Positions 555-43,006 of a stretch of 64,000 nucleotides of DNA are shown here, piece by piece. Origin of the DNA: Phallusia mammillata (Eukaryota); the NCBI GenBank assembly GCA_965637545.1, contig OZ281500.1, forward strand, positions 22,816,001 to 22,880,000, in the 5' to 3' direction. A model generated the notes under the pieces. The model did not search any database, was not told the origin of the DNA, and saw nothing but the letters and a program-made list of their open reading frames with translations. The translations under genes were made by a program, and so were the position numbers. Every line of letters begins with the position of its first letter. Position 1 is the stretch's first letter.

Positions 555-1542
555 TTATTCCAAAAAAGCTTTTTGTGGATAAATGTTTCTTCCTATTGTC
601 TCCGCTCTTCTATTAAAATCGAAAACCGATATTTCGATGTGGACGGGAGGTTGAAAAACCTTTCTCGTCATTTTACTCCTACCGACGTCCACTTCTTGCT
701 CCGGAGTGGGAGCTTCTCTTGAGGCGGTTTCGTCTTCCTATAAAAAAATTAACAAACTACCTTACATGCTCTGGTCTAAATTGACGGTCTTGATAGGATT
801 TTATTACTATTCATTGGCTTTTGTTTCCTAAATTAACCAACTATCATTTTGATGCGTTTTATATTTTAATATGTTTTTGACAAATAACGGCCTTTTAAGA
901 GATGTTTAAACATTTTTGCTTTGTTACTTAGGTAATCTTTACGCATTTGCTGTTTCACCAAAAAATTCATGCTTAAATTTAAAAACTAAAAAAAAACTAT
1001 TCTTAAAACTATAAAGAAAGTCAAACGTGTTTTAGTGTATAATGTTGCGAAATGTGTCGCGAATATTACAACCAAGACTTTCTTTTGATTGCCACCGCAC
1101 CCAACTAAACCTTGTTCCAAATTAGCACGCTGTTTTATCATCAGTATGTGTCAGTATACAAGCTTGCGCAATTCTATGATTGTTAATTAAACAAGACATG
1201 ACGCATTTCCTATGACCAACTCCATCCAATCAGCTGAAAGGGAAAGGCAGAGACATGACAAAGGAATTGTCAACAAAGACACAAAGGTGCTGAACAAATA
1301 TAACGAAACAATTCTGAATTAACCGACTGCAGTATTTATCAACAGACAACTATTAGATAAAGAAATATGCGATTAGCACGTTTTCGTCACGTGTTATATG
1401 CACATGTACGAAGTTGTATTATTTAAACTTACCAAAAATTGAAAACTGCCGCTGTCAGTTGGTGTGTTCGGGTTGCTTTGGTCATACAATGACATTGCAT
1501 TATGGTTTAAATTAAGCAGATCAGAATCTATTGGTTCTTGTT
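555..1542 (-). CDS. Divergent member of the small-protein family; last two coding exons (1542-1433, 737-555); 5' exon(s) not identified
   Basis: AG/GT boundaries with compatible phases (110-nt exon phase 1 to 0; 183-nt terminal exon). Terminal exon translates EDETASREAPTPEQEVDVGRSKMTRKVFQPPVHIEISVFDFNRRAETIGRNIYPQKAFLE*, which aligns with the family motif. The terminal exon is absent from the ORF track. Confidence 0.7.
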
Positions 1543-2030
1543 CTGCGAAAAAAAGAAGAAAAACGTTTAAAGGAAAGCAGTAAATACAAATTATACACTT
1601 TAAAAGCTGAACAATTTTGCAAACCACACACAAAAATCACGTTGCAATGACAAGAATTTACAATTGCGTACACATTTTGTTTTACACAAATCAAGTACAA
1701 AAAACAAATTCATTTTGTCACTACTTGTTACGCTACGACTTGATTGCTCTGGTGTAAATTGGGTTTGTATGTTTTCCTTTACCAAGCAAAAGATACTTTA
1801 TCACTTAAATTAAATACGTCGACCTAGTTTTTTGCAAACAAACTTGCTGTAAACGTTTGAACGTGCACAAGAGATAGTATCAACAACATACCAGATGCTT
1901 GGAAAAAGTATTGTCGGTCATGGGTGTAAGAAATGCGCATGTGACTTGCATCGATGACGAGTTATTCTTTGTTTTGAAAAACGAATTCCTAAGTTTAAAT
2001 TAGCGAATATCAGCCAAATTATCCCTAGAC

Positions 2031-2508
2031 CAGTGGTTCCCAACCTGGGGTTCGCGGACCCCCAAGGGGTCCGTGAACTGCTTTCAGGGGGTCCGTGGAG
2101 GCAAACATTTGTAGCATTAACAGCAGTACAATATTTTTAAGTTCCCAAAGCGTTTTTCCATTCCTGCGTATGAGTGCAAACCATTTATCAAACCTCTGGA
2201 TCAGGAAAACTTGTGATTGTTACCTCCATTGTGACATCACAACACACATTAACAACATAACTTATTGTGCTTTGTTTCAAGTATTGTACACCAGAAAGGC
2301 TCTTGTTGCATTTGACTGCTACAGTACAGTACTTTATTGAGATTAAAGGACTGTGAACGTTGAATAAAATTCTGCCCCCAAAACGAAAGTATAATAAAGT
2401 ATAATGCAGGAATCGACAAACATAACAAGACTAAATTACGTTGGGGGTCCGCGGACCTATAAAATTTCTAAAAGGGGTCCGTGACTACAAAAAGGTTGGG
2501 AACCACTG
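2031..2508. mobile_element. Non-autonomous hAT-type MITE
   Basis: TIRs cagtggttcccaacct / aggttgggaaccactg; perfect 8-bp TSD ccctagac (2023-2030 and 2509-2516). Confidence 0.9.
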
Positions 2509-3246
2509 CCCTAGACAAATGTTAACTCATGCGAACGTGTTTTTTTCAAAAGAACATACAAACAAACTAGTATAGCATCTGGTGTTAAAAAGAAAACCGG
2601 ACAAAAATATTTACCAGTTTTTACCAAACAAACCTGCAAAACTGCAGAGTTATCCACCATCTAAGTTACTTACACAGCAAGCCAAAAGATTTGTAAAAAA
2701 CTTAATAGCAGCAAGCTGTTATAGCAGGCAAGACAGCAGTCTTACCCACGCATTGTAAATCACCACAACCACAGGCAATTAATCAAACGCTGTTGACTCA
2801 CAACTCCAAACTAATACACACACAAGCCATCTACCTAGATATTTATACACGTTGCACTTCCGGATATAACGACGAGTGTGCATTGTCTTGGATTAATGAA
2901 CAGTTGGCCCCACTCCAAAGATTTCCTGGGGAATTTTTTGTTGGTGTCATTCCGTTTACAACTACACCTAAGAACAAAAAATGTTTCGATAACTTAATTT
3001 TTGATTACTAGATTAATAGTAGTAAACTTTAAAAACAAGATGCACAATGTACAATGTACGGTTTTGAATATTTTGAGCAGATAGAATGGAGCCAGTATTT
3101 GCGTGTAAAACATGACTACGTTTCGACAATTTATTTTGTATTTTACGCAAATACTAGCTTTGATTATTCTGCTCTCAACACACAAGTGCACATCTCTTTT
3201 CTGATTGTGGCCCATGGTTTTAGAATTAATCTGATGTATGTGTAGT

Positions 3247-7000: not shown

Positions 7001-7166
7001 TCATAGCGACCAGTGTTTAGGCTTGCGCCGGAGTTTTTGTTTCGTTTCGGTTGTCTCCGTTTCAGCGTCGAACCTTTGCAACCGTTGCTGGATATAATTC
7101 TGGTTCCGCTTTTTTTGGGCGACAGTGCCGTCAGTGAAATTGCTTGAGCATCGAAACGGCAGAATC

Positions 7167-8257: not shown

Positions 8258-8449
8258 TCATATAAATGCCCTTGGCCCGAAACCCGGATCGTCCCAGTCT
8301 AAAGCCCGGCGCCTTGCATGGGCTTCCGATACCGATATTTCATTTCCAACCGGGGGATTGCAAACTTTTCTAATCATTTTCTCATCCCCGATGTCAACTT
8401 CTGATACACTGACTTGTACCGGAGCTGGGCATATGTCGGAAGGCGGCAA
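8258..8449 (-). CDS. Divergent member of the small-protein family, terminal exon; candidate upstream exon 8637-8586
   Basis: Acceptor tttctacag, then 192 nt giving LPPSDICPAPVQVSVSEVDIGDEKMIRKVCNPPVGNEISVSEAHARRRALDWDDPGFGPRAFI*; matches the DxGxxxMxRKV..P...EISV...RAF motif. Confidence 0.65.
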   Translation of the reverse strand: MPPSDICPAPVQVSVSEVDIGDEKMIRKVCNPPVGNEISVSEAHARRRALDWDDPGFGPRAFI

Positions 8450-13667: not shown

Positions 13668-14700
13668 TCCAAGCTACTATTTAATCTGGTAATATCCACA
13701 CAAAAACGAAAAATATCGACAACCTTTATTACATGGGTCACAAGATGATGCTAAAGAGTTTATAAAAAACAAACACATGCAGTGCTTTGCACACAAACAT
13801 TATCAAAATCGTACAAAAATTGGAACAACAACAGGTTACTTATTTCGCCTTTGATTATTTTTGTATAAAGTCACAGTGCAACAAAAATAACAAAAGCATC
13901 AATACACCGACGTAAGACACAGTTTGCAAATAACACTCGCGTTTCTACAAAACGTCTGTCACAAAGTCACTACCAACACACTTACTGATATTTACAGGGC
14001 GTTATAGGCAAGTTCAGAATGCATTTTTACAATTTCGCAACAAGATTATGCCATGGTTTTAGCCCTTGTGATGGCTTAAATGTACATAGAAAATGTTAAC
14101 AGGCGTTTATCCCCACAAATTATTAGTTGTAACAAAAAGAGCCGCAAAACAGCCATAACGCATTTTAAGGCGATGCATTTTTTGTCTTTTAACCCCAAAT
14201 GTGCACCGGCCACCAAGCTGCTATAAGTTTTATCATTAACACAGTAATTGCACACACGAGGATCTTGATTTGTCCTTTGTCTAAACTCTAAAGTATGACA
14301 AATTCACTCACAGTAGACGGTTACTGTATATCAATTAAAATTTTGAAATAATGTGCCGTTAAGCGTAAAGGTGAATGGATGTTGGTGAAAACCTAGGAAA
14401 ACTAGCTGCAGACAGTGCACATTGTTTTAACCAATATAGTTACATGAGCGTGGCTGGTGGCAAGACATTGGTCGTAGAGTGGTATAGCAAGGCTACGGCA
14501 CTCCAGTCTGTAGCTAACTTGTCATTATGCCGGCACATCGCTTTAAAGACTAGAACTATGAAATAAAATCGCATTGAACTGTTTAGGCAGGCTATTAAAA
14601 AGGCCACTAATATTAAAAAAGGTTAAGACTAGTAAAAGAATAGACCTAGAACGCAATATATTGCACAAGCATAAACAGAAACGTCTAAACAAGAAATATT

Positions 14701-16153
14701 TTATGTAAAAACCCTTCCATTCTCTCTGTATATTGCAGTTCGTTGTCTGTTGAAATGTGCCACCGAAATTTCGACAAGAAAAGGTCGTTGAAAAACTTTC
14801 CTGATCATTTTTTTCATCGCCACATCAGTTTCTGTGCTCATGTCTCCCTCAGGATGAGCAATTACTCCCTCCATATCATCTTCGGGATGCATTGTATTGG
14901 AAAGTTGCTGAAGCTAAAATATACACAAATTTGGGTTATGAAGAGTTTTATGCAATTTTTAAGTCCAAAATCTACAAGCGCAAACTTTTCCTCTGCAAAA
15001 ACACTGTCAAACTGCCTTGGTCTTACTTGCGATGTAATGCCAGAATTTTTGCTGCCATGCATAATTGCAAATTTGTAAAGCTCTTCTGGCAAGTATTATT
15101 TATTCCGCCGTTTCGACGTTCTATGCAGGTCGTCTTTATCAGGGTAAATAACACTGAATGCGCGTAGTACAGTGCACGATACACAAAGAAAAAAGAGAAG
15201 TAAACGCAAGCATGCTTTCTTTTTTCCTTTGTTTATGGTGCACTGTATACTAATCGCATTCAGTGTTATTTTGTCAAAATCGTCTAATGACAATTGCAGA
15301 TGTGCAGCGAATAAGCAATAATTTGCTGACAAAAATGTTGGTGAGTCGTGTTGCCAGGTTGCGCTTTTGTCGCCGAATTGGGCTACTTTTGACATCGAGT
15401 TGCGGGCTTTTTTCATGAGTTGCGGGTTGCGTCTTTTTGGGCGGGTTTGTAAATGACATTTTCTACCGTATGGCGAGTGATGATTGCATTATATATGATC
15501 AAAAACGTTGTGAGTTTAATTTTGACAAAAGAACTAATGAAACTGCCCGGAGCGTCGGGGATTTAACATCCAGCTGGGCAAAAGAATGCTTTCAGCCCAC
15601 GCAATGCAACGTTCATTTTTTAATCAAAGAAACTTAATAAACGGCTTTGTTGCCACGTAATAAGAATTACCTCTTGGCAAAAATCATTGTTTCAAAGGTC
15701 ACCTTTCTTTGTTATTAATGCGAACATGTTTGTTTTAAAGTGGAGATACGTAATTAAAAAAAAAGCTTGGAAAAGGGGTAACTAGAGTGTGTTCCATACA
15801 GTGTTTCTAAACAGCCCAAAATTAATTTTAAAATGCACAAAAATTAAATCTGAATCGTTGAAACCTGAATAATTGTCACACAAACAGGCGAAAGCAGTGA
15901 AAATCAATTGTATTTCAGGTGTTTGCAAAATTGGGCTCGTTTTGGGCTACTTTTGACGGGTAAAGTTGCGCTTTTCCAATATTTGAGCTGGCAACTTGAC
16001 TTCAAATTAAAAAATAAAACAATTTACTGCCAAACGATGTAAATAACAACGAACATTAAAATATTTGCACCACTGCAACTAGCAACTGGTCTATATTAAT
16101 TTAGAAATACTTACAGCAGCATATTGGTCCATAAGATGGTCAGATTCCGACAT
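14701..16153 (-). CDS. Small-protein family, spliced type I copy A; coding exons 16153-16115 and 14913-14701; 83 aa
   Basis: MSESDHLMDQYAA followed by donor gtaagt; acceptor attttag; LQQLSNTMHPEDDMEGVIAHPEGDMSTETDVAMKKMIRKVFQRPFLVEISVAHFNRQRTAIYRENGRVFT*. Phase 0/0; same structure in copy B. Confidence 0.75.
15071..15152 (-). ncRNA. Degenerate copy of the hammerhead-ribozyme-like element (core reads CTGATAA)
   Basis: Minus strand ttatttacc-CTGATAA-agacgacctgcatagaacgtc-GAAA-cggc-ggaataaataa; homologous to 54132-54215 including the flank tgccagaagagct. Confidence 0.4.
15345..15996. mobile_element. Probable non-autonomous DNA transposon remnant (hAT-like ends) in the intron of copy A
   Basis: Inverted ends gttgccag / ctggcaac and internal repeats ttgggctacttttgac; related fragment at about 4255-4295; TSD not seen. 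Confidence 0.45.
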
Positions 16154-16261
16154 TGTTATTGGTTTCAGTTTATTTGTATTCTTTTAAGCAACTTGTTTTA
16201 ATCACAAACACTTGATGAAACGACAATTCAAGTGTGTAAGATTACTACTTGCAACCCTACG

Positions 16262-16545
16262 TACAAATAAGTCTAATTTCCCAAACTGACATGAAATATC
16301 GGTAGATTGCAAACGGTGTTGCTTTCAAAAGCGATATTTATGACAACCACATGGTAAACCTAAACCAATTCGGTAAATTTCACAGCAACTACTATCTCTG
16401 TAAGATTGCATTATCTGTTTGAAATCAAGTGGTGCTGTCAATTCTCTTGTCACTAGCTGAGGCTGAACACTGCAAGTTTGTGGCTGATAGTTAAAGTTTA
16501 CATTTAGGTTCGTTTTTTACTTCTTTAACAAAACCTGCAGCTTCA
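16262..16545. repeat. Duplicated 5' UTR/promoter block of type I genes; near-identical copy at about 20306-20600, more diverged copies near 19280-19420, 22190-22450 and 45050-45330
   Basis: Direct similarity, e.g. tacaaataagtctaatttcccaaactgacatgaa and cggtagattgcaaacggtgttgcttt. Confidence 0.8.
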
Positions 16546-17903
16546 AAACCAACTATAACGAAGCAGAACATGCTTTCCTTTGTATGCTATGATCAGGTGG
16601 CTTGAAAAGACAGGTGGACACGGTTGACAATTTTGCCTTTTTCTTCAATCTCTGCAAACGATCGTGGGGAAGTACCGTCTGGTACAACGCAGACTGATGT
16701 AAGGTGGTCGCCGCCGCGATGGATTAACAAGAGAATCGGGGCAGGATGCCGTTTGTCGCCTGACACAGGGTCTTTGTGTTGCGCGTAAGGCTGTGTATTT
16801 CACTCAACTGTCGTCGATTGGTCGTGCAGCTATTATTGTCATGTAACACAAAAATATGTTCATTTACACAGGCGCGAGATGATGCTAGAGAGCGTTATAG
16901 AGGAACAGTTAAAAAATACTTTGTAAAAAAAATCGGAATTTAAACAAAATTGGGATCACAACATAGTATTGAGTTGACTACAAAGTAACAGTACCATAAT
17001 ATTGCCATAAAATCGACACGCCCATGTAAGTCACAGATTTGTAAATAACACTTACATATCGACAAACTTTTATAACAGTGGCTCAAAAAAACTTAGTGAG
17101 CTGAATTTATTTACCTAAAATTGATCGTTTAGTTACGGTCGTCTTTAAAAACGTTTTCAGAAAAGCCGGTGAGAGATAGCCCATAGCTTTTAGTGGGAAA
17201 GTTGTTGTGTATGAAATATTCAAACGTTGAAAAAAAATACGACGTCTTCACCTAAACTATGACGTCACTTTGTATTTTTTCAAAAATATATTTTCATGAC
17301 GTCATAAATTAGCTTGTGATGTCATAAGCCGTGTTACCCAAGCGTAAAAGCGTTTTACATTTTAAAACTTTTGTTGTTTTTTCGTTTTGGCTTTACTGTA
17401 AAGCATTTTTTAAACCTATAATTTTTTGACCCAAACAAAATCTACAGCAGCTTTCAAATTAACCTCAGTTGAGAAAAAAATTCGGACCAATATGCATTCT
17501 ATCGCCATTTACAATTGACCCTGTCTTGGTGCCCATTTATTTCCCCGTCACGACTAATGCTCTTGTCTGCCGTGATGACTGAATGACACAGAATAACCCC
17601 AGACAGGTGTTTGGTAGTAACCCACACGAGGCGTACAAAGCACACGCGCCGCGCAAAAAAATGACGTCATGCAAATGCGAGACGCAAAGTACACGCGCCG
17701 CGCAAAAAAATGACGTCATGCAATGCGAGATAGAGCGAGAAAGTGAAGCGATGATGGTGGGAACGAATTATTATCTATAAAAACTAAAAATAAATATGAA
17801 ATTGCGTTGAACTGTTAAGGCACGTTACAATGATAAAAAAGGAAAGCATCTTAACAGATTATATTGCACAAACATAAACAGAAGTGTCCAAATTGCAAAT
17901 GTT

Positions 17904-19152
17904 TTATGTGAAAGCTCTTCCATTCTCCCCCTATATCGTAATATGCAGTCTGTTGAACTCTGCCACAGAGACCTCCACATGAAAAGGTCGTTCAAAAACT
18001 TTCCTGAGCATATTTTCCGCAGCCACATCGATTTCTGTGATTTCTTCTGTGATATCTCCTTCGGGATGAGCACTTGCTGCCACCAAGTCACCTTCCGGGT
18101 GTATTGGATTGAAAGGCTGTCGAAGCTAAAATAGACACAATTATAGGTTCACAAGAGTTTCAATGCCAAGATGTACAACCGCTATTTGTTTCCTCATTAA
18201 AAAACACTGCTTGCGTTTTAATGCCTTGCGTTTTACTTGCGATGTAATACTAACGGTCACCAGGTTTTGTGAAGGATTTTATGGCATTTTGAGTTGAGTC
18301 GTGTAGTTATCGGCTGGATAAAGGTGCATAAATACATCATTACCAACAGACGAAGTTTAGCCAAATTAAATTACGACACCATAATCCGACGTAAAGCAAA
18401 AATTGGGATTGCCAACTTAAAAATATACAATTTTATAACTTAGTGATGTGTATCACTAAACGCGAGGCATCTTTTATAACGATGATTTGCTTTTCAAGTA
18501 AATGTTTAAAGATGGTTAGTATCACTGTTGCTCTTAACTTTTACCATCTCCACTGCAACAAAGATAAGCCCATTTCAACCAAGTTATTAGTATATTGAGG
18601 ATACGACATTTTCGACAAACAGAATCATGTTTTAACGCCAAAGGAATCAGTGTCAAGTTGAGGCGACCACAACCACTAGGCTACCGTTCAAATGGTCACC
18701 AAAAAAATAGTGACTTGCTGCAAATTCAGCAAAACCCTAATTGTTAACTACGATCGATTGTTTGGTAATGTCGTGAACTGAAACAAAACAGTTTTCGTTT
18801 TTTTGTCACCGCGAAAACAAATAGCCGCTTGGGGTATGCAGCTAATATCGAAGAGGTTGCCAATCCAGACAAGTAAAAAAGGAGAGCAAAATGAAAGAAA
18901 CTAGTCAATCAGTACCAGTAGGTTACGTCATTTGCACCTCATTCTCGTCACAGTGTATTTCGTATTTCGAGCAGGATTATTTGTACAACTCGCAACTTTC
19001 TTTAGTTATATCTGTTTTCCTACATCAAGTGATACAATGCCTAAATCGGGTCTGAACGGGTTGTTAACCAACAAACCGCAGTTAACGATCTATATTGGTT
19101 TTGAAATACTTACGGCAGCATGTTGGTCCAAAGGATGGTCAGATCCAGACAT
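17904..19152 (-). CDS. Small-protein family, spliced type I copy B; coding exons 19152-19114 and 18125-17931; 77 aa because of a premature TAG (ancestral stop at 17904-17906)
   Basis: MSGSDHPLDQHAA | LRQPFNPIHPEGDLVAASAHPEGDITEEITEIDVAAENMLRKVFERPFHVEVSVAEFNRLHITI*GENGRAFT*; splice sites match copy A. Confidence 0.7.
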
Positions 19153-19624
19153 TGTTATCGATTTGACTTCTGTGTCTTCTTTTCAACAACGAGTTTACAA
19201 AACAACAATTTGCAGAAACGACAATTTAAGTGTGTAACGTTGGAGATGCTAGTTGCAATCCTAGGTGCAAAATAGTCTTATTTGCTTTACAAACTCACAT
19301 GAAATACCGATAGTTTTTAAACCGTGTTGCTCTTTATCCTTTTTCGACATAACCATATGGCAAACTTTATTTTAAATCCTTTTCACGTCCTCAGCTAAGG
19401 CTTAAAACTGCAAGTTTACGGTTAACCAAACTTCCCTAACATTACAGACTTTACTTCAAATAATAACTCATCGCTGTTTATGCCTTTAATTCCATGCGTG
19501 TGAGATGGTAATAGTAGAAAATGGCAGACATTAAGCGACTTACCAACGATGACGCCTCCATTATATATAATGACGTCGCAGTAAACGAAGAGTGCGTTTT
19601 TTCAGACAGGAAATTTTACTAACA

Positions 19625-19718
19625 CCATACCTTACGGGAGACCCACATTTAGATGTCCATACCTTACGGGAGACCCACATTTAGATATCCATGCCTTACG
19701 GGAGACCCACATTTAGAT
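19625..19718. repeat. Tandem repeat, 3 x 32 bp
   Basis: Unit ccataccttacgggagacccacatttagatgt starting at 19625, 19657 and 19689. Confidence 0.9.
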
Positions 19719-22700
19719 AATTTCCGATAGGTAGCGCAAAGGGCACCTTTTCCATTTAAAACGATATATCTCAAAAAATGGATACGGTTGGAGCTAATAG
19801 GGTCGACCCCATTGTGTGAAACGCAACTCTTGTTTACATGTGTAACGAAGCGTGATTGCTTTGTGTACGCTTAGTCTGAGCGCAGATCCATTCCTTAAAA
19901 TCAGCTGACAAGTTTGTTGTTTCACTATGAGTTCGATGTGCTCATTGCCAAATTCGGTTCTTAATTAGATACTTTGGTGCGGTTTTGATATTATTGTTGT
20001 GGCAATTTTCAAGTGAAAAATGTTTAGTTTTAGCACCACATCTTTAAGCAAATGTTTACTTTCTGTAGTCTTTGATCACGCACATCTTATAGTTTATATC
20101 CCCACGTTGATAAACATTCTCCTCAAAAGGCATAAACTACAACCAGCAAGTTTCTCGGCGGGGCTGACTTCCACATCATTTACCCCACTAACCCTTAAAA
20201 TGGTTGAATTTAACAAACAATTGCCAGATGGAATAAAATTGGGACAGTCACCTACCTCATATAAAATGAACATTTAAGCAGAGTATTTGTTGAATGTTTT
20301 AACTTCTACAAATAAGTCTAATTTCCCAAACTGACATGAAGTGTCGGTAGATTGCAAACGGTGTTGCTTTCAAAATCGATATTTACGACAACCACATGGT
20401 AAACCTAAACCAATTTGGTAAATTTCACAGCAACTACTGTCTCTTCAAGCTTGTATTTACTATTTGAAATTAAATGCTATTGTCAATTCTCTTGTCGCTA
20501 GCTGAGGCCAATAAGAAGCGAACGTTTGCTAACAAATAAATTTCACTCATCCTTTATCTTTAAAGTAAAAAAAAACCTTTATCTTTAACACAACCTGTAA
20601 TAACACAATCAATATAGTTTGTTATCAATAAAAAGCAATTTGGCTAAACTCTAATCTGAAACACTCCCATCTCGCTGCTTGTACCAGCTAAACTGATACA
20701 GAATCCAACGCTTGAACATAAAATCGCGAAAATGGTGTGCGCTCGAGCACATACATAAAGTGTTCATTGACGCGAGCTCTCCGGTACAGCGTAAGGTAGA
20801 GTCCCGAGCTAAACAGTACCCACGTTTTTGTTACAAGCTCGAATAAAACTCCTTCCCTCAACAATAGAAATAAAAACATGTTAAGTAATTTAAGTACCCG
20901 CTATCTGGAACTTAATAATTTCTCTTTCTACATTTACTAATCTTTTCAAGAGCCCAAAAGATATTATTTTAATTACAGTCCTCGTTTCGTAAACATGGGA
21001 TGATGTTAAATAGTTGTAATTCAGGCAGTTTTTATTTGCGCTTCAACGAATGAGTATACCCATCGTTGGTAACATATGAATTAATTGTAAGCCCTGCGCC
21101 GGGTTGCCGTTGTTTGCGTTCAGACAAAGCCGTCATGCGCGAATGGCAAAGAAGGCTAATATAGTTCATCCACGCTCCGCTTGGGTTATGAAACGTGGTT
21201 TCAAAAAACATAATCTACAAAATAACAACAACTATAGGTTGTCTTGTACTAAAATGTTTTGCCATACAACAAAAACATTTGCGCCAACTACCGTAACACC
21301 TGTACATATTTGAATAACAAAGTTAACTTCTCAATTGTAACAAATCCATGTATATTCTCAGTTGCTGTATTTAAAGGCGATATTCTCTTCACGAACCAGA
21401 GAAGAACTCCGCCCTAAAACTTCTGTCCGACTGCAGCCCAGTTTGCTGTAAAAGCGACAAGTGCACATATTTTCCAGCGAAAGTTCCCTGGTCTATTGCG
21501 TTGTTGGCTTTTACAAATCGCCTATTTTTTTCACCCACTGCATAGTTTTGTTTGTGGACAACACCACAACGCCAATCATCAGCGACTTAAAAAAATTAAA
21601 CTGATCTAAATTTGTAGGAAATATTTAATTGTTGTATTTGTTGTCCACAAACGGTTAATTCTAGCGAGTTTAGCATGGTGCACAGTTTTACATAAACGGC
21701 CGCGCAAATTACTCAATCGATCACACCTTCGCTACCCTACTTGTTATAGATGCGTAAGGTTGTTGCATCAACTTACCTTTTATCGTCTTTTACCACGTAT
21801 GCTGGCTTATACCTTTACACATTTCAAAATAACATTTATCTTTAACTTTTTCGTTTATTGCTTTTTAAATCTAAGACTACAGCAAGGTGTATCGCCACAC
21901 ACTTTTTTAGTATTCGGTATGACTTGGACATTTTTTATATGATTATAATAACATAAAGGACTTGGTTTCAGGTTCGTTTTTTTCTTCTAACTAGTTCCTG
22001 GTTCGTTTTTGCTACAAATTCTTTTCTAATTCTACTACAATCAAATACGTGTTGGGCGATACAGCGCGCACGAAACGCCCCGACTGTTCTCCAGCATGGT
22101 TGACTGAAAAGCCGCTAAAGACCGTTCACCAGTACTCAGCGACTCCGAAGTGTTCCAGAAATGTGTGTTTCGCATACCTTAACGCTTTTAGGAAACATCG
22201 TGCGAATGCAATATTGGTAGATTGTAAAATGTAAACCGTGTTGTTTTCAAAAATAACGAACCTGAACCAACACCTGGTAACTATGTATAAAAAAGGATGA
22301 AGTACAAGACTTTACCGACTGAATACTGAAAACCTTTAAACTGATCTAAATCACCCGCACCTTACTCGCAATCAACACCGCGCTACTTTAAAATATTCAA
22401 TCACATATAAGGCTGTTTTATGCAAGATGCAGAACCTAATGGAAACAAACCGTTTCGCGCTAAAAACCTGCAACGACTTTTTACTTATTATTTGGACTAA
22501 TTAAAATGTGCCACTTTTACAAAAACAGTTTTGCCTCTGACACATACAATTTGGATATATTTCGGTAAAAGAAGCAGATTTGGAAATTTAAAAAAAATTT
22601 AGGGAACAAAGTTTATCTTTATCAAATTATACAAACTGCCTTACTGGCATAAGTATTTTTGATATTTTCATTCTCGTCTAAATAACAAAACGTACTGTGA

Positions 22701-23498: not shown

Positions 23499-23901
23499 CC
23501 ACGCTTGAGTGCTTCTAGACGTCGTTGCATTCCGGCCACGCTTGAGTGCTTCTAGACGTCGTTGTTTTCCGGCCACGCTTGAGTGCTACTAGACGTCGTT
23601 GTTTTCCGGCCAAGCTTGAGTGCTTCTAGACGTCGTTGTTTTCCGGCCAAGCTTGAGTGCTTCTAGACGTCGTTGTTTTCCGGCCACGCTTGAGTGCTTC
23701 TAGACGTCGTTGTTTTCCGGCCAAGCTTGAGTGCTTCTAGACGTCGTTGCATTCCGGCCACGCTTGAGTGCTTCTAGACGTCGTTGTTTTCCGGCCACGC
23801 TTGAGTGCTACTAGACGTCGTTGTTTTCCGGCCAAGCTTGAGTGCTTCTAGACGTCGTTGTTTTCCGGCCACGCTTGAGTGCTTCTAGACGTCGTTGCAT
23901 T
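23499..23901. repeat. Minisatellite, 11 x 37 bp, derived from coding exon 6
   Basis: Unit cc(a/c)-type ccacgcttgagtgcttctagacgtcgttg(ca/tt)ttccgg; starts every 37 nt from 23499 to 23869; single-copy counterpart at about 46689-46720. Confidence 0.95.
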
Positions 23902-24172
23902 CTCAGTCTTGCTCAATTACTCAATTAAAATTAAATTAAAAATGCTCAATTAAAAAAAGATCAATTACTAGTAGTAAAGTATTTTGTTATTCTTAATTTA
24001 TGACGAGCTATTGCAGTAGTTTGTTTAAAATGTAAATATATATTAAACAAAGCAAGGAGCCATAAGATATGCAGCACAGACCAGGAAATGTGCACATGTC
24101 GTTACCAAGCAGCGGCACGCCTAAAAATTATACAGTCTCGGAACGTAAAAAGAGATTTGAATTCAGGCTTTA

Positions 24173-24284
24173 CTTTTTTTCACATGATTCGAACCCAGGA
24201 CACTCCCGGGGACGAATCCCGATCAGGGTTTTCATATCTGTATATGGGTCAGTCGCGCTGGACCATTCGGCCAAGCTCTTGCCC
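24173..24284 (-). mobile_element. tRNA-derived (Leu/Ser-like) SINE or tRNA retropseudogene
   Basis: Minus strand A box tggccgaatggt, B box gggttcgaatc, A-rich tail; 14-bp TSD gaattc(a/c)ggcttta at 24159-24172 and 24285-24298; empty site in the paralogous intron at about 46880. Confidence 0.75.
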
Positions 24285-26741
24285 GAATTCCGGCTTTACA
24301 GTAACTCACGTTTTTCGACCGTTCATCGGTTTCCAGTTCGCGGGAAAGTTTCTGCAAAAACATATCCACGCGTCGGCGCTGTTGAGCTTCTTTATCTCTA
24401 GCGTCGTCGAGAAGTTTTTCGCGTTGTAATCGCTCTCTGTAAACCACAGTTTTTGTGTTTTTACTTTACCGATTCAGTATTATAAATGGACAGTTAAATA
24501 CAAAACCACTTCCCCTCCCCCTTCTTGTACACTGTCACGTCATAGGACTTTCCAGGGTCGCTTAAGGGCTAAATAACCAAGTTGGGGGCGGAGAGTGTGT
24601 TGTTTAAGTAAGTAGACTCATGTGACTGAACACTTATGATTCGTTGACTTTAATTTAAATTCTGCACACAATTTGTCAGTTTGTTATTCACTTACTTCTC
24701 CTCTACCTTTAGTTAAATTTCAAATAAACAAGATATTGGGTGCCTTGCATTGCCGACGATGAGCAGCGGTGGTTTGTTGTGATTTTTTCTTTGTGTATGG
24801 CTGACCTGCATTGAACCGCACACCAGCGTCTTTTGTCCAACGCGCAACTCAAGCCTTTGTTGTGAAACTTAAACCAATCTATTTTGAAACCTCGGATTTA
24901 TGTATTGTGCTAAACCGAATATGTTGTCATTCTTTAAATTGCACAAATGTGACAGACAGAGGAAAAGTGGAGTGCTACTTAACCGGGGCTGACTTAGTCG
25001 AGTGCGTTACAGTAATTTGAATCCTCGTTCAATAAGGAGGTATTACGTCAATACAACCGCTTTCTCCAATTTTCCAACCCAATGGCACGTGCACCTAAAC
25101 TTGAAGGCATTTCACGACCAATAACAGAAGTAAGCAAACAATCAATCTAATTGCTATTTTTTTCAATATTTTACACGCCAGGTGAAATGAAAAAACAAAA
25201 CCGAAACCCCCACTTTCGCAATTACTGCAGCATAAACATTTAAAAAAAAGAATGTAAAATGCTTTTGAGAATACCGCCGTTGTAAAACCCTCTCTACAAC
25301 CAAACCTTTTCTGCATTGCACTATGAAGAGAAGAAACGACACACACACAAAAGTCCCGTGGGAAAGTACCGTAATCCCACGCACCTATCGATGTCAACCC
25401 GCTCTGCAGCATCACCAAGCGAAATGTTGTTTATTTAAAATCCACTCTTTAAAATAAAAACAGCTTTGCCTACACTACACAACTGCCCTTAGTACAGCCA
25501 CGGCAGTTTTTGTGTCGAAATACCATATGTTGGTTATTTAACTTTACAATAACGAAAAGCATTTATTTAAAGCAGCCAGCCACGAAATGATGCTAAAAAG
25601 CATATGAATAAATACGTAAAGTGTAAACAGAACTGGCACTAGTGTAAAGCGTAAAAAAATCAATGCAATTTTACACACAAATTGGAACAACATTACAACT
25701 TTTTCCAAGCATTTTTTAACTGTTTTGAGATTACAGAGACAAAGATTAAAAAGTTGTCAAACAACTTCATCTTTTTGACGCTTTTTGATTTTTAAATTTT
25801 ATTTTAAAATTGTCTTACTTTACAATTTTGTCACAAAATAAAGGGTAGAATTAGGCGAAGCCAAGTTTGCCATACACAAAATATGCTTTTGGGTACAATA
25901 TTAAATTTTCTTAAACCACGTGCGCTAAACTTTTACAATCTCATTACAATGGGGCTCGAGAACAGATAGACAGATGCTTGGCACAAAAGAACAAGACAGA
26001 GGTAACACAGTTGATGAGCAAACATAACTGAATATCACTCAAAGGGTGTATAATAGTCACAATCATGGCGATGGAATGAAACAAATACATTCGTGTTGGT
26101 TTTGTAAAGAACGCATTGTAGCATTTGCATACAATACGGACACATACATCATGCTAACCGGGACATTCAAAGATTCAACCTTTTTAAGTTTTTGACTTTT
26201 GTTACGATCATGTAACTTGAAAATCTTGGTTTAAAACCAAAGTGTTGAAATTAGCTTTTGGATTGTAGCTAGACAGTAAAATTGTTTTCAGGTTTTTGCA
26301 GAAAAATGGCAATGGTTCTATTTGCGGTAAAATATATAAAGTAGCGATGTAATGAAAAATAATTAAAACCAATCTTTAAAATAAATAAAGATTAAGGCCA
26401 CGAAGTAAATATTTTACTATTCAGCAGTCTCAGTGGATCTAAAAAAATTATGAAGTAATATGAAGGTTCTACGCTCTAAGAACTTTGTTACAGGGTGAAC
26501 ATGACATCAAAATAATATATTTTAGAACTCAAACACCCCTTGGAGGTCCGTGTGTTTGACACCTCTGATGGAAATACGAAAATAAATTTACGGTATACAA
26601 GCAAGTAAACGTCTACAGGATAGAAACTTGTAAAATATGATTTAATTTAAAGTGGCAATGTTGCATTTAAGCCAAATTGTTACACACATTATTGAAAAAA
26701 AGTCAAAAATCACCAACGGCTATATAACTTGATAAAATAGT

Positions 26742-26951
26742 TCATGCAAAAGCCCGTTCATTTTCCCTGTATATTAATGCACGCTGTCTGTTGAAATCTG
26801 CGACCGATATTTCCACATGGAAAGGTCGTTCAAAGACTTTTCTGATCATGTTTTTCAAGCCTACATCGACTTTTGTAGAAACGTCTCCTTCTGGGTGAGC
26901 TACAAAACTCCAAGTCGTGCTCACTTGTGAAGCAGAAGTCAAGTTGTTCAT
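26742..26951 (-). CDS. Small-protein family, single-exon type II copy, 69 aa
   Basis: MNNLTSASQVSTTWSFVAHPEGDVSTKVDVGLKNMIRKVFERPFHVEISVADFNRQRALIYRENERAFA*; frame kept in four paralogues with only codon-multiple indels. Confidence 0.7.
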   Translation of the reverse strand: MNNLTSASQVSTTWSFVAHPEGDVSTKVDVGLKNMIRKVFERPFHVEISVADFNRQRALIYRENERAFA

Positions 26952-27272: not shown

Positions 27273-27372
27273 CGTTCTCTAGTGATACAAAAAGGCCCAT
27301 TCACTAGTGGTACGCGTACCACAGATTGGGAACCCTTAGTTTAAATGCTGCCGCGCGCATGTCATGCCAGAA

Positions 27373-28580
27373 CCAACATGAAAAAGTAAACTGGTGTGGC
27401 TTGGGCGTCTTTCCTCTAGTTTTTTTGGACTGCGCGTTGATCAGTGTCAAAAGCGACGGACAAACATGAAAAAGTAAACTGGTGTGGCATGGGCCTTTTT
27501 GTCGCGAGGTTTTGCGATTGCGCGAGGAACTGTTTTAAAGCGTCGCATGTTCTGAATGGACAGACGTGAAAAAGTAAAGTGGTGTGGCATGGGTGTCTTT
27601 CCGCTAGTTTTTTTGGACTGCGCGTTGAACAGTGTGAAAAGCGACGGACAAACATGAAAAAGTAAACTGGTGTGGCATGGGCCTTTTTGTCGCTAGGTTT
27701 TGCGATTGCGCGAGGAACTGTTTTAAAGCGTCGCATGTTCTGAATGGACAGACGTGAAAAAATAAACTGGTGTGGCATGGGTGTCTTTCCGCTAGTTTTT
27801 TTGGACTGCGCGTTGAACAGTGTGAAAAGCGACGGACAAACATGAAAAAGTAAACTGGTGTGGCATGGGCGTCTTCTCGCTAGTTTTGAAAAGCGACCCA
27901 CAAACATGAAAAAGTAAACTGGTGTGGCATGGGCGTCTTCTCGCTAGTTTTTTTGGACTGCGCGTTGAACAGTGTGAAAAGCGACGGACAAACATGAAAA
28001 AGTAAACTGGTGTGGCATGGGCGTCTTCTCGCTAGTTTTGAAAAGCGACCCACAAACATGAAAAAGTAAACTGGTGTGGCATGGGCGTCTTCTCGCTAGT
28101 TTTGAAAAGCGACCCACAAACATGAAAAAGTAAACTGGTGTGGCATGGGCCTTTTTGTCGCGAGGTTTTGCGATTGCGCGAGGAACTGTTTTAAAGCGTC
28201 GCATGTTTTGATTGGACAGACGTGAAAAAATAAATTGGTGTGGCATGGGTGTCTTTCCGCTAGTTTTTTTGGACTGCGCGTTGAACAGTGTGAAAAGCGA
28301 CGGACAAACATGAAAAAGTAAACTGGTGTGGCATGGGCGTCTTCTCGCTAGTTTTGAAAAGCGACCCACAAACATGAAAAAGTAAACTGGTGTGGCATGG
28401 GCGTCTTCTCGCTAGTTTTGAAAAGCGACCCACAAACGTGAAAAAGTGAACTGGTGTGGCATGGGCGTCTTCTCGCTAGTTTTGAAAAGCGACGCACAAA
28501 CGTAAAAAAGTAAACTGGTGTGGCATGGGCTTTTTTGTCGCTAGGTTTTGCGATTGCGCAAAGAACTGTTTTAAAGCGTT
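27373..28580. repeat. Composite satellite: 15 units sharing a ~33-bp core with three recurring variable parts (64, 88, 100 bp)
   Basis: Core caaacatgaaaaagtaaactggtgtggcatggg at 27373, 27461, 27561, 27649, 27749, 27837, 27901, 27989, 28053, 28117, 28217, 28305, 28369, 28433, 28497. Confidence 0.95.
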
Positions 28581-29713: not shown

Positions 29714-29917
29714 TCATGCAAAAGCCCGTTCATTTTCCCTGTATATTAATGAACGCTGTCCGTTAAAATCCGCAACTGATATTTCCACATGGGAAGGTCG
29801 TTCAAAGACTTTTCTGATCATGTTTTTCAAGCCTACATCGACTTCTGTAGAAACGTCTCCTTCTGGGTGAGCTACAAAACTCCAAGTCGTACTCACTTGT
29901 GAAGCAGAAATGTCCAT
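29714..29917 (-). CDS. Small-protein family, type II copy, 67 aa
   Basis: MDISASQVSTTWSFVAHPEGDVSTEVDVGLKNMIRKVFERPSHVEISVADFNGQRSLIYRENERAFA*. Confidence 0.7.
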   Translation of the reverse strand: MDISASQVSTTWSFVAHPEGDVSTEVDVGLKNMIRKVFERPSHVEISVADFNGQRSLIYRENERAFA

Positions 29918-30284: not shown

Positions 30285-30294
30285 GGGAGTTCCC
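30285..30294. promoter_or_regulatory. NF-kappaB consensus site GGGAGTTCCC upstream of the 29.7-kb copy
   Basis: Exact consensus match; homologous to 27263-27272. Confidence 0.4.
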
Positions 30295-32262: not shown

Positions 32263-32269
32263 TACTAGT

Positions 32270-36402: not shown

Positions 36403-36636
36403 CTCTGTCCAACCCCTACCACGCCACCTATGTATGTCCAACCCCTACCACGCCACCTATGTATGTCCAACCCCTGCCACGCCACCTATGTATGTCCAAC
36501 CCCTACCACGCCACCTATGTATGTCCAACCCCTACCACGCCACCTATGTATGTCCAACCCCTGCCACGCCACCTATGTATGTCCAACCCCTGCCACGCCA
36601 CCTATGTATGTCCAACCCCTGCCACGCCACCTATGT
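36403..36636. repeat. Minisatellite, about 8 x 29 bp
   Basis: Unit cctatgtatgtccaacccct(a/g)ccacgcca; single-copy counterpart at about 43278-43306. Confidence 0.95.
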
Positions 36637-37237: not shown

Positions 37238-37444
37238 TCACAGTACGCGTAGGCCCATTGAAGGCGCTATACCGAATCAGCCGGTCACCAAGCATTCACC
37301 ACCATATGGCAAGGCGTAGGCTAGAAAAATCTAGCCTGCGGTGGGACTCGAACCCACGACAGGAGTCTTTCCGGGACTCGCGCTGACCGCTGGTCTGCAT
37401 AGACGCTTCAGGGCTGATCCCAGTTATGAATTTATGTTCATCTT
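37238..37444 (-). mobile_element. tRNA-derived SINE
   Basis: Minus strand cagaccagcggt (A-box-like) and gggttcgagtccc (B box); 16-bp TSD aacttaaatcaatcaa (37222-37237, 37445-37460); empty site in the paralogue at about 31430; related fragments near 49760, 55343-55482 and 56015. Confidence 0.8.
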
Positions 37445-41234: not shown

Positions 41235-41375
41235 ATTTCAAAAAAGATCGCTTGAAAACCTTTTTGATCATTTTTTTACAGCCATATAAGTTTATGTAAC
41301 TAGATATCCTGCGGGATGAGCAATTACAGCCATTAGGTTGCCTTCGGGGTGTATTGGATAGCATGTTTGCGAAAG
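41235..41375 (-). pseudogene. Pseudogene of the spliced type I small-protein exon
   Basis: Acceptor mutated (attttac instead of attttag); LSQTCYPIHPEGNLMAVIAHPAGYLVT* then frameshifted MIKKVFKRSF; 3' end truncated. Confidence 0.8.
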
Positions 41376-42799
41376 GTAAAATAGAAACAAATTGCAGACA
41401 TGTAAACTCTTTAATTTGCTGGTTACAGTTAAGCAAAACAAGTATTTATGCCATTCATGTTTTGTCGTCCACTTATTGTTGTTTGGGATGCTTTAAATTC
41501 ACGGTAAAGATCTTTTTTAAATTCTCTGAAATTCAAAAGAACTGGAATAGGTTATTTCATGCTGACACACGCACATAGTACACCAAACCAAAATTTTATA
41601 TATGGGTTTGTCTATTAATCCCAAAGACAACATGACATATCTGATGTAACCCTTCTGTAACTCCAAGTGTACGGTGGTTGCTTACGAAGAAGGGTGACGC
41701 ATTTTTATTTGGATTGGATACCCTTACCTGTAAAATGTTTATGACGTAATAAAAATAAAAACTTATTTCTGACTTCCACATTAAATTAGCACTAATCAAA
41801 ATAATACTTTCGCTTCTCTTTCTCTTCTCAATGTTACGTTTACGGATTGTTGGACCTCGTCATGCGTAATGCACAAAATATACACGTGATCTCTCGCGAA
41901 CAAATACTCTGTTGGCCTGCGGTTTAAAATATGCGTGGCAATAAAATTCAGGAGAAAACTTATACAGTTAATGGGCAAACATCATTGCATATCACTTAAG
42001 AGGTTGAAACAACTACATAAAAATTCATCAGTGCGATAAGATTTTAAATCATTGCGATAAGTTGAAACCAACCCACTCTTTTGGCTTTGTAAAGAACACA
42101 TTGTACCATTCGCATACAGGCAATCCAATAGATAAAATGCAAGTACTAACAACATACTAACCGGTTTATTTAGGGAGTCAACCTTTTTGAAGTTTTATGC
42201 CTTTGTGTAGATCATGAAACTCGAAAATCGTGTTTAAAACCAACAGAGTGGAAATCAGCTTCTGTTTTGATTTTTTAGCTATACAGAGAATTGCTTTCAG
42301 GTTTTCGCATATAAATGGCAATTCACAATGAAACATAAACGCAACAAAGGAACAAAGTGGTACATGGTTCTATTTGCTGTACAATACATATAAAGTAGCG
42401 ATGTAATGAAAAATCATTAAAACCAATCTTTAAAATAAATAAAGATTGACGGCGCGAAGTAAATATTTTACTATTCAGTAGTCACACTCTTAGCGCGTCT
42501 AGAAAATTGTATGAAGTAATATAAAGGTTAAACTCAAAGAGCTATGTTACAGAGGGAACATGACAACAAAATAATATATTTCAGAACTCAAACACCCCTT
42601 GGAGGTCCGTGTGTTTGACACCTCTGATGGAAATACGAAAATAAATTTATGGTATACAAGCAAGTAAGCGTCTACAGGATGGAAACTTGTAAAATATGAT
42701 TTAATTTAAAGTGGCAATGTTGCATTTAAGCCACAGTATTACACACATTATTGAAAAAAGTTCAAAATCGCCAAAGGATGTATAACTTGACAAAAAAGT

Positions 42800-43006
42800 T
42801 CATGCAAAAGCCCGTTCACTTTCCCTGTATATTAATGCACGCTGTCTGTTGAAATCTGCGACCGATATTTCCAAATGGAAAGGTCGTTCAAAGACTTTTC
42901 TGATCATGTTTTCCAAGCCTACATCGAATTCTGGATAAACGTCTCCTTCTGGGTGAGCCACAATAGAAGTCGTATTCCCTTGTGAAGCAGAAATTAAGTT
43001 GTCCAT
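42800..43006 (-). CDS. Small-protein family, type II copy, 68 aa
   Basis: MDNLISASQGNTTSIVAHPEGDVYPEFDVGLENMIRKVFERPFHLEISVADFNRQRALIYRESERAFA*. Confidence 0.7.
   Translation of the reverse strand: MDNLISASQGNTTSIVAHPEGDVYPEFDVGLENMIRKVFERPFHLEISVADFNRQRALIYRESERAFA

What the first reader, a model, noticed from the sequence alone, without database searches (positions are those of the whole stretch)
555..43006. Tandem array of at least nine genes for an unrecognised family of microproteins
Terminal exons or ORFs at 555, 8258, 14701, 17904, 26742, 29714, 35954, 41235 (pseudo) and 42800 are all on the minus strand. They share D[VI][GA]xx[KN]MxRKVxxxPxxxE[IV]SV and, apart from the truncated pseudogene, a terminal [RK][AV]Fx(x)-stop. 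The two left-most members are very diverged at the DNA level yet keep the motif, and indels among type II copies are codon multiples, which argues for real protein selection. The six models with an identified start are 67-83 aa (86 for copy B read to its ancestral stop), lack an evident signal peptide, and are small enough for annotation pipelines to miss. I recognise no known domain. Novelty is inference until searched.
Basis: partly seen in the sequence, partly recalled or inferred. Interest (0 to 1): 0.8.

Follow-up and report, generated by a model that had tools for sequence, protein, structure and literature searches.

The report
Orphan sea-squirt small-protein gene array
A 47-kb stretch of the sea squirt Phallusia mammillata genome carries ten head-to-tail copies (about seven intact) of a gene for a 67-84-residue soluble protein with a conserved core that matches no known family; at least one copy is transcribed, but its function is untested.

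Summary
Eight minus-strand ORFs carry the strict motif, there is one frameshifted relic, and I found a tenth copy 4.2 kb left of the window. A profile search of the whole 240-Mb genome finds the family only at this locus. By an identical PSMD9 protein, the genome is Phallusia mammillata.

The ORFs are coding. Between subtypes, codon positions 1/2/3 are 55/64/39% identical, and dN/dS is 0.17-0.32 with synonymous sites saturated. In the young type II copies, indels are seven times rarer in the CDS than in the flanks, and all are in frame. Their core has pN/pS 0.56 and their N-terminal tail 1.4.

Copy C is transcribed. RNA-like contigs in four runs from two studies run from the predicted acceptor (14913) to the first AATAAA after the stop. 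The predicted first exon and the junctions were not seen.

Pfam, PDB, the ESM Atlas and two very large protein searches gave no relative. Those libraries lack even the window's own copies, so absence elsewhere is weakly tested. A faint Nas2/PSMD9 resemblance failed a profile-profile test. The AlphaFold model has low confidence.

Best reading: a lineage-restricted, birth-and-death family of small, largely disordered intracellular proteins that dock on a partner through the conserved core. That function is inferred.

The parts
555..737 (-). Copy A (type III), terminal coding exon including the stop codon
   Evidence: It carries the strict motif. The acceptor is TTTTTTTATAG. It is 75% identical in DNA to copy A' outside the window. 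An AATAAA lies 273 nt after the stop, at the same distance as in A'.
1433..1495 (-). Copy A, first coding exon (21 codons, begins MS, GTAAGT donor, phase 0)
   Evidence: Its 3' part is 92% identical to the matching exon of A', whose ATG follows an in-frame stop. No RNA evidence was obtained.
8258..8449 (-). Copy B (singleton type), terminal coding exon including the stop codon; start not identified
   Evidence: It has the motif and the PRAFI end and the acceptor TTTCTACAG. A scan for an upstream ATG-to-GTRAG exon in phase 0 gave no convincing candidate.
13709..14700 (-). Copy C, 3' UTR
   Evidence: RNA-like contigs of 1202 and 1221 nt reach about 13728 and 13709. The first AATAAA after the stop is at 13730-13725.
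14701..14913 (-). Copy C (type I), terminal coding exon including the stop codon; transcribed
   Evidence: Contigs in four runs from two studies cover it. In one run the contig ends exactly at 14913. The acceptor TTTTAG is conserved with copy D.
16115..16153 (-). Copy C, predicted first coding exon (13 codons, GTAAGT donor)
   Evidence: Over 70 nt it is 87% identical to the copy D exon, against 72-77% elsewhere in the unit. It is not covered by the RNA contigs.
17904..18125 (-). Copy D (type I), terminal exon with a premature TAG at 17931-17933; the ancestral stop is at 17904-17906
   Evidence: Searches show 1 TAG inside. It is not covered by RNA contigs. It is probably a pseudogene or a truncated product.
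19114..19152 (-). Copy D, predicted first coding exon (13 codons)
26742..26951 (-). Copy E (type II), single-exon CDS of 69 codons plus the stop codon
   Evidence: The upstream 270 nt and downstream 690 nt are conserved with copies F, G and I.
29714..29917 (-). Copy F (type II), CDS of 67 codons plus the stop codon
35954..36163 (-). Copy G (type II), CDS of 69 codons plus the stop codon
41242..41393 (-). Copy H, type-I-like relic with frameshifts and stops (pseudogene)
   Evidence: It is 71% identical in DNA to copy C. The motif is split over two frames, with stops.
42800..43006 (-). Copy I (type II), CDS of 68 codons plus the stop codon

Best explanation
This is a real tandem family of small protein-coding genes in the ascidian Phallusia mammillata, and it is restricted to this lineage as far as the searches could see.

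**The array.** Ten head-to-tail copies lie on the minus strand over 47 kb, in four subtypes:
- A'/A
- B
- C/D/H
- E/F/G/I

**Gene structure.** The ancestral gene has two coding exons. The first is a short polar exon of 13-21 codons. The terminal exon carries an acidic, variable tail and a conserved core of about 40 residues, E-[VI]-D-[VI]-[GA]-x2-[KN]-[ML]-x-RKV-x3-P-x3-E-[IV]-SV, with [RK][AVT]F near the C-terminus. In the youngest subtype (E, F, G, I) the first exon was lost. A new ATG arose in sequence homologous to the 3' end of the old intron, giving intronless genes of 67-69 codons.

**Evolution.** The array evolves by birth and death. One copy is a relic, one has a premature stop, and one has no recognisable start.

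**Proposed mechanism (inferred, not shown).** The products are soluble, intracellular and mostly disordered. They have no signal peptide or membrane segment, and seven of the nine aligned terminal-exon peptides are acidic (pI 4.8-6.3; E 8.2 and A' 9.5). They act by docking the constrained core on a partner protein and folding on binding, as small inhibitor or adaptor proteins do. The N-terminal tail is free to vary.

I put about 0.85 on 'real coding family' and about 0.3 on this mechanism.
For: **Shown**
- The motif occurs in eight ORFs plus a relic. A tenth copy lies outside the window, and the profile finds no other locus in the genome.
- Between subtypes, identity at codon positions 1/2/3 is 0.55/0.64/0.39.
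- Between subtypes, dN/dS is 0.17-0.32 with pS near saturation. It is 0.39 for C-D and 0.49 for A-A'. Fisher p is 3e-5 to 0.01 for four of the five pairs tested; A-A' is not significant at p = 0.1.
- In type II, CDS indels occur at 4.9 per kb per pair against 35.2 in the flanks. All 6 CDS indels are in frame, against 37 of 173 in the flanks.
- In type II, pN/pS is 0.56 in the core and 1.40 in the tail.
- Short first exons are conserved, with ATG, GTAAGT and phase 0. In A' an in-frame stop sits just before the ATG.
- The type II ATG maps to the old intron end, and the old acceptor now codes ISASQ.
- Copy C is transcribed. Contigs of 1.05-1.22 kb in four runs from two studies cover 14913/14929 down to about 13709-13728, where the first AATAAA lies. 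The rest of the 6 kb laid is bare apart from short repeat-derived pieces, so these runs behave as RNA.
- No hydrophobic segment is present: the maximum 11-residue Kyte-Doolittle value is 1.36 or less. Seven of the nine aligned terminal-exon peptides have no cysteine; B has two, and D was scored only up to its premature stop.
- The AlphaFold2 model has mean pLDDT 57.8 and only two helices.

**Inferred**
- The intracellular location.
- The docking mechanism.
Against: - No read or contig joins the predicted exons, and exon 1 of copy C has zero depth in the four runs.
- RNA also covers at least 115 nt upstream of the copy C acceptor at a third to a half of the depth. An unspliced form, or one initiated inside the intron and encoding a 63-residue product from an internal ATG, therefore exists.
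- Trans-splicing to a short leader could not be excluded.
- Polymorphism in the transcribed copy C looks neutral: 8 replacement against 2 silent differences. These include E to K at the invariant E of E[IV]SV and V to L in D[VI]. Diversity is like that of the 3' UTR.
- Whole-CDS dN/dS among type II copies is about 0.3-2.
- Expression of type II, A, A' and B was not tested.
- No partner, localisation or translation evidence exists.
Confidence: 0.6

Rival explanations
1. The family was once protein-coding but is now decaying. The loci are still transcribed, the ORFs are drifting towards pseudogenes, and they have no present protein function.
For: - Two of the ten copies are broken (D, H) and one has no recognisable start (B).
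- Within type II, third codon positions are no more variable than first and second positions: 0.91/0.94/0.95.
- Whole-CDS dN/dS within type II is around 1.
- Polymorphism in the transcribed copy C is 8 replacement to 2 silent, and it hits two conserved residues.
Against: - Four type II copies, 3-9% diverged, keep intact frames. Their flanks carry seven times more indels, mostly out of frame.
- The type II core still shows pN/pS 0.56.
- The motif has survived divergence that saturated synonymous sites and erased DNA similarity.
Confidence: 0.17
2. The ORFs are the last exons of larger multi-exon genes, not microprotein genes.
For: - No junction was observed, so the 5' structure is unverified.
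- In copy A the frame stays open upstream of the proposed ATG, back to an acceptor-like site.
Against: - The copies lie 1.6-9 kb apart.
- The only conserved upstream blocks are the short ATG exons and their promoter-like flanks.
- In A', C and D an in-frame stop lies closely upstream of the ATG.
- Type II homology ends about 270 nt upstream of the ATG.
- None of the longest intervening ORFs scanned has a Pfam domain; only the longest ones were tested.
Confidence: 0.05
3. The family is a truncated, highly diverged derivative of the N-terminal domain of the proteasome assembly chaperone PSMD9/p27/Nas2. It stops where the PDZ domain would begin and acts on proteasome base assembly.
For: - The only PDB matches to the family profile are two yeast Nas2 chains, both at the N-domain segment. 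The motif aligned is P-[ED]-G-x5-V-D-V-x4-M-I-R-K, with E = 0.31.
- hhalign picks the same region of the metazoan PSMD9 alignment.
- The terminal RAF resembles the residues that open the PDZ domain in vertebrate PSMD9. This last point is from my own recall and was not tested.
Against: - hhalign gives probability 0.3% and E = 0.2 for one pairwise comparison.
- Pfam Nas2_N does not hit any copy at E up to 10.
- The species' own PSMD9, on another chromosome, resembles the family less than yeast Nas2 does. That is the opposite of what descent within tunicates predicts.
- The segment between the two look-alike spots differs in length and sequence.
Confidence: 0.03
4. This is a non-coding repeat or transposon fragment whose ORFs and motif are incidental.
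For: The array is interspersed with repeats and minisatellites.
Against: - Codon periodicity of conservation is present, dN is below dS, and indels are in frame only.
- The family sits at a single locus in 240 Mb.
- Splice and poly(A) signals lie at conserved positions.
Confidence: 0.02

Closest known systems
Taxonomically restricted (orphan) tandem gene families of ascidians, such as the other unmatched arrays noted in this same genome by earlier follow-ups of this scan
   Same: Head-to-tail array, birth-and-death turnover with pseudogenes, no match outside the lineage, and few exons.
   Different: The products are far smaller (67-84 residues), lack cysteines, a signal peptide and a membrane segment, and are predicted to be mostly disordered. 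The family has only ten copies at one locus.
Small intrinsically disordered docking or inhibitor proteins of animals (PKI, PP1 inhibitor-2, ARPP-19/ENSA), as a functional analogy from general knowledge
   Same: Similar size, soluble, acidic and low-complexity flanks, and a short conserved core that could fold on a partner.
   Different: No sequence relationship was found. The core does not fit the PP1 RVxF pattern, because RKVF lacks the spacer residue. No kinase pseudosubstrate or ENSA-type motif is present. A partner is entirely hypothetical.
PSMD9/p27/Nas2 N-terminal domain (Pfam PF18265)
   Same: A local look-alike of about 20 residues around [PA]-E-G ... D-[VI]-D-[VI] ... R-x-K.
   Different: The match is not significant in profile-profile comparison (0.3%). 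There is no PDZ domain. The own-species PSMD9 is less similar than the yeast protein.
Ascidian haemocyte antimicrobial peptide precursors (clavanins, styelins, Ci-MAM and similar), from general knowledge
   Same: Small precursors of about 80 residues, in multigene families in sea squirts.
   Different: Those have N-terminal signal peptides and cationic mature peptides. These proteins have polar N-termini, no hydrophobic segment, and most are acidic.

Membership tests
PSMD9/Nas2 N-domain (PF18265) | Significant sequence or profile match to the Nas2_N model | tested here: not met
   There is no Pfam hit at E up to 10. The PDB profile hit has E = 0.31. hhalign against a 30-sequence PSMD9 alignment gives probability 0.3%.
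PSMD9/Nas2 N-domain (PF18265) | N-domain followed by a PDZ domain | tested here: not met
   The ORFs stop after [RK][AVT]F plus 1-2 residues, and no PDZ match was found.
PP1-binding regulators with an RVxF motif | [RK]-x(0,1)-[VI]-{P}-[FW] docking motif | tested here: not met
   Read directly from alignment A1: the invariant R-K-V is followed at once by F or C, so no residue separates V and F. The consensus pattern is from general knowledge.
Secreted peptide or antimicrobial peptide precursors | N-terminal signal peptide | tested here: not met
   The first-exon peptides are polar. The maximum 11-residue hydropathy is 1.36 or less. No dedicated signal-peptide predictor was available.
AbrB/SpoVT-type swapped-hairpin domain (a lead from memory: an [IV]RKV strand followed by a second strand and a helix) | Sequence match to the domain or to solved members | tested here: not met
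   There is no Pfam hit. No AbrB, MazE or SpoVT chain appears among the PDB profile matches at E up to 10. AlphaFold2 predicts helix, not strand, for that segment, at low confidence.
Translated microprotein (smORF) gene | Evidence of translation (Ribo-seq or peptides) | not testable with these tools
   Only transcription of copy C and evolutionary signatures of coding are available.
Translated microprotein (smORF) gene | Purifying selection on the ORF | tested here: met
   Between subtypes, dN/dS is 0.17-0.32 and codon-position identity is 0.55/0.64/0.39. The type II core has pN/pS 0.56. The test is weak or absent for the tail and for polymorphism in copy C.

The most novel reading that the evidence does not exclude
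The array encodes a new class of chordate-lineage-specific small regulators. A constrained core of about 40 residues that folds on binding targets a conserved cellular machine. A fast-evolving acidic tail and copy-number turnover reflect an ongoing conflict, for example gamete or self/non-self recognition, or defence. On this reading it would define a new docking motif and a new protein family.
Probability: 0.2. Interest if true: 0.65.

Novelty: new variant of a known kind. Interest (0 to 1): 0.4.

Why it matters
If the products are made, this is an unannotated protein family in a widely used embryological model, Phallusia mammillata. mRNA injection, live imaging and CRISPR are routine there, so function could be tested quickly.

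It is also a compact case of how small genes are remodelled. The youngest subtype lost its first exon and recruited the end of the old intron as 5' UTR and start codon.

The wider point is methodological. Neither the species' public protein set nor libraries of billions of proteins contain these ORFs, so small two-exon genes of this kind are invisible to standard annotation.

The biological importance is unknown. Orphan arrays are common in tunicates, and the recent evolution of this one is close to neutral outside the core.

Tried and rejected
**Searches that found nothing**
- Pfam on five terminal-exon peptides: nothing.
- Word-indexed protein search with one copy, and with the nine-sequence alignment at E up to 10: nothing.
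- Full HMMER profile search of 1.84 billion representatives: 0 hits. It did not return even the window's own proteins, so the library does not hold such small ORFs and the blank is weak evidence.
- JGI metagenome contig scan with the core pattern: 165 pattern matches, none confirmed.
- ESM Atlas feature search for copies E and C: best scores 0.78 and 0.82, with recognition 1519 and 1217. These are below the level that marks known families.

**Structure**
- AlphaFold2 with the nine-sequence alignment gave pLDDT 57.8. I did not send this model to fold search, because matches to a low-confidence model are meaningless.

**Leads rejected**
- The Nas2/PSMD9 lead from the PDB profile search (E = 0.31). 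I followed it to the species' own PSMD9 and rejected it by hhalign.
- A weak genomic look-alike on another chromosome (E = 0.5). It lies antisense within an integrin-alpha-like gene and is probably chance.
- The loose ends of RNA contigs inside the copy C intron. They match nothing in the 84 kb examined, so they come from dispersed repeats, not from splice partners.

**Steps that failed or were left out**
- A scan for a first exon of copy B gave no credible candidate.
- Linear motifs checked by eye and found not to fit all copies: PP1 RVxF, calcineurin PxIxIT, D-box, PIP box, Mad2-interaction motif, WH2 LKKV, C-terminal HbYX.
- Exons were searched one by one, by reference.
- The first-exon peptides (13-21 residues) are too short to search.
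Full report
**Observation**

The stop-to-stop ORFs that contain them are 60-94 codons long.

I label the copies A (555), B (8258), C (14701), D (17904/17931), E (26742), F (29714), G (35954), H (relic, 41242-41393) and I (42800).
- D carries a premature TAG eight codons before the ancestral stop.
- H is type-I-like in DNA (71% to C), but its motif is split across frames with stops.

A single-sequence search and a profile search of the window's whole 240-Mb assembly find the family only here. They add one more copy, A', 4.2 kb left of the window at G000:C7:22811810-22812004. The array therefore has ten members over 47 kb, all in the same orientation.

One further hit at E = 0.5 on another chromosome lies antisense inside an integrin-alpha-like gene. 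I take it for chance.

**Organism**

Earlier notes of this scan call the genome a sea squirt. I checked this. The genome's PSMD9 protein is 100% identical to the UniRef entry for Phallusia mammillata, and the next hits are other ascidians.

**Gene structure**

For C and D, a 13-codon ORF starting with ATG and ending at GTAAGT in phase 0 lies 1.0-1.2 kb upstream, at 16115-16153 and 19114-19152. It is 87% identical between the two copies over 70 nt, against 72-77% for the rest of the unit.

The acceptor TTTTAG directly before the terminal ORF is conserved between C and D.

For A and A', a 21- or 19-codon first coding exon is 92% identical at its 3' end. In A' it is preceded by an in-frame stop.

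Both candidate acceptors of C are in phase 0.

B has a good acceptor but no convincing first exon.

The four type II copies (E, F, G, I) have their ATG in the same exon and give 67-69 residues. A DNA alignment shows that the type I acceptor region (TTTTAG|CTTCAG) is homologous to type II codons for ISASQ. The type II ATG sits in an inserted or diverged stretch that corresponds to the 3' end of the type I intron. Type II is therefore a 5'-truncated derivative that recruited intron sequence as 5' UTR and start codon. Its conserved unit runs from about 270 nt upstream of the ATG to about 690 nt past the stop.

**Is it coding?**

Between the four subtypes, DNA similarity is mostly gone, yet the peptide core is kept. 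The invariant residues are D, R-K-V, P, E, S and V.

| Comparison | Measure | Value |
|---|---|---|
| Between subtypes | Identity at codon positions 1/2/3 | 0.55/0.64/0.39 |
| Between subtypes | Nei-Gojobori dN/dS (pS 0.6-0.85, saturated) | 0.17-0.32 |
| C vs D | dN/dS | 0.39 |
| A vs A' | dN/dS | 0.49 |
| Five representative pairs | Fisher test on substitution counts | p = 3e-5 to 0.01 for four pairs; A-A' p = 0.1 |
| Within type II | Identity at codon positions 1/2/3 | 0.91/0.94/0.95 |
| Within type II | Whole-CDS dN/dS | 0.3-2 |
| Within type II | Indel events per kb per pair, CDS vs flanks | 4.9 vs 35.2 |
| Within type II | Indels in frame, CDS vs flanks | 6 of 6 vs 37 of 173 |
| Within type II | pN/pS, core vs N-terminal tail | 0.56 vs 1.40 |

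Within the young type II group, whole-CDS measures show no constraint. Two finer tests do show it: the indel counts and the split of pN/pS between core and tail.

The picture is long-term purifying selection on the core, with a free or diversifying tail.

**Transcription**

The run search returned five small RNA-like runs (two studies, 2020) holding 5-7% of the words of 14601-19400. It also returned two DNA-like holders.

I laid four of the RNA-like runs on 14501-20500.
- Contigs of 1048-1221 nt cover copy C's terminal exon. They run left for about 1 kb, to about 13728 and 13709.
- The first AATAAA after the stop is at 13730-13725.
- In one run the contig ends exactly at the predicted acceptor, 14913. 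In two others it reads 16 nt into the intron.
- A separate 120-nt contig (14907-15026) has a third to a half of the depth.
- The remaining 5 kb has no depth, apart from short high-depth pieces. Their loose ends match nothing nearby, so they are dispersed repeats. The runs therefore behave as RNA, not DNA.

Copy C is thus transcribed and ends at a poly(A) signal.

What was not seen: exon 1 of C (zero depth), any joint, and any cover of copy D. Contigs cannot show starts. They also drop short or rare pieces, and a 16-nt spliced leader would fall below the reporting length. The two-exon model therefore rests on conservation, not on RNA.

The upstream cover suggests that an unspliced or intron-initiated form exists. 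It would encode a 63-residue product from the first in-exon ATG, which parallels the type II arrangement.

**Polymorphism**

The RNA contigs differ from the reference at 2-3.5% of positions, in the 3' UTR and the CDS alike. In the CDS I count 8 replacement and 2 silent differences over two haplotypes. They include E to K at the invariant E of E[IV]SV and V to L in D[VI]. This is what neutrality predicts (sites are about 3.6:1). It argues against strong present constraint on copy C. The sample is tiny, and the contigs could stem from a copy-number variant.

**What is the protein?**

There is no hydrophobic segment, and seven of the nine aligned peptides have no cysteine (B has two). Seven of the nine have pI 4.8-6.3; the exceptions are E at 8.2 and A' at 9.5. 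The first-exon peptides are polar.

AlphaFold2 with the nine-row alignment gives mean pLDDT 57.8 and pTM 0.24. Only two helices appear, at residues 29-38 and 49-66 of copy I. The best block means are 68-74 in the core.

No relative was found:
- Pfam gives nothing.
- The ESM Atlas gives scores of 0.78-0.82 with low recognition.
- The word-indexed search gives nothing, with one copy or with the alignment at E up to 10.
- The exhaustive HMMER profile search of 1.84 billion representatives gives 0 hits.
- A JGI metagenome scan gives nothing.

There is an important limit. The exhaustive search did not return even this species' own copies, although Phallusia proteins such as PSMD9 are in the library. 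The family is therefore unannotated, and small ORFs of this kind are not in the libraries. A 66-position profile would also need about 40 bits to pass in a library of that size. Absence from other tunicates is thus not established, and no tool here reaches other tunicate genomes.

**The one lead**

The PDB profile search returned only two yeast Nas2 (p27/PSMD9) chains, both matching at the N-domain, with E = 0.31. The striking local alignment runs over P-[ED]-G ... V-D-V ... M-I-R-K.

I located the species' own PSMD9, an apparently intronless ORF on another chromosome. I built a 30-sequence metazoan alignment and ran hhalign. The result was probability 0.3% and E = 0.2 over 19 columns. The ascidian PSMD9 is less like the family than the yeast protein is, which is the reverse of what descent would give. 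I reject the lead and keep it at about 3%.

**Mechanism**

Shown:
- A tandem, lineage-restricted family with coding signatures.
- One transcribed member.
- Exon loss and start-codon gain in the youngest subtype.
- Birth-and-death turnover.

Inferred:
- The products are small, soluble, largely disordered intracellular proteins.
- Their constrained core docks on a partner and folds there.
- The acidic tail varies freely.

The core alternates hydrophobic and polar residues around the invariant P. It is followed by an amphipathic stretch, and the aromatic residue near the C-terminus is conserved.

I checked common docking motifs by eye, and none fits all copies. I put about 0.85 on the coding-family statement and about 0.3 on the docking mechanism. 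The main rival (0.17) is that the family is now decaying.

**Novelty and score**

The sequence family is unmatched and unannotated. The kind of thing, a small taxonomically restricted tandem family in a tunicate, is familiar, and this scan has already noted several other orphan arrays in this genome, though none on this DNA. Function is unknown, and recent evolution is near neutral outside the core. Interest is 0.4.

Noticed in passing
window 27372-28580; 36406-36636; 23497-23897: Minisatellites sit directly upstream of type II copies. A 64/88/152-nt array of about 1.2 kb starts 150 nt beyond the conserved upstream block of copy E. A 29-nt x 8 array abuts that of copy G, and a degenerate copy of the same unit lies upstream of copy I. 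A 37-nt x 10.8 array is at 23.5 kb. Two long minus-strand ORFs (27416-27907, 27944-28375) lie inside the first array and have no Pfam match.
   Followed up: partly
window 14907-15026: RNA-like contigs continue upstream of the copy C acceptor at a third to a half of the exon's depth. This suggests intron retention or a start site inside the intron, which would parallel the way type II copies acquired their 5' end.
   Followed up: partly
window 56425-56766 and 57029-57334, minus strand: Two ORFs match the spondin-like thrombospondin type 1 repeat (PF19028, E = 5e-10 and 8e-7, both below the curated cut-off). They are probably exons of a TSP1-repeat gene flanking the array on the right.
   Followed up: no
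window 47671-48513, minus strand: This 280-codon ORF is the longest in the window. It has no Pfam or PDB sequence match, and its nature is unknown.
   Followed up: partly
window 22900-24686 vs 46049-47491: Blocks 77-96% identical, in the same order, lie on either side of the type II part of the array. This looks like a segmental duplication or a shared repeat bracketing copies E to I.
   Followed up: no
window 16262-16463, 20307-20508, 45066-45105: A dispersed repeat, 90-97% identical between copies, forms the distal part of the conserved region upstream of copy C exon 1.
   Followed up: no
L018:1501-1584 (G000:C6:3817531-3817614, plus strand): A 28-residue look-alike of the core (KVF-x2-P-x3-D-ISVA-x-F) was found at E = 0.5. 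It lies antisense within a gene with integrin-alpha-like FG-GAP and VWA-type exons, and is probably chance.
   Followed up: partly
L021:1489-2076 (G000:C6): The PSMD9 (p27) gene of this genome reads as a single uninterrupted ORF. It is 100% identical to the Phallusia mammillata UniRef protein, which identifies the species.
   Followed up: yes
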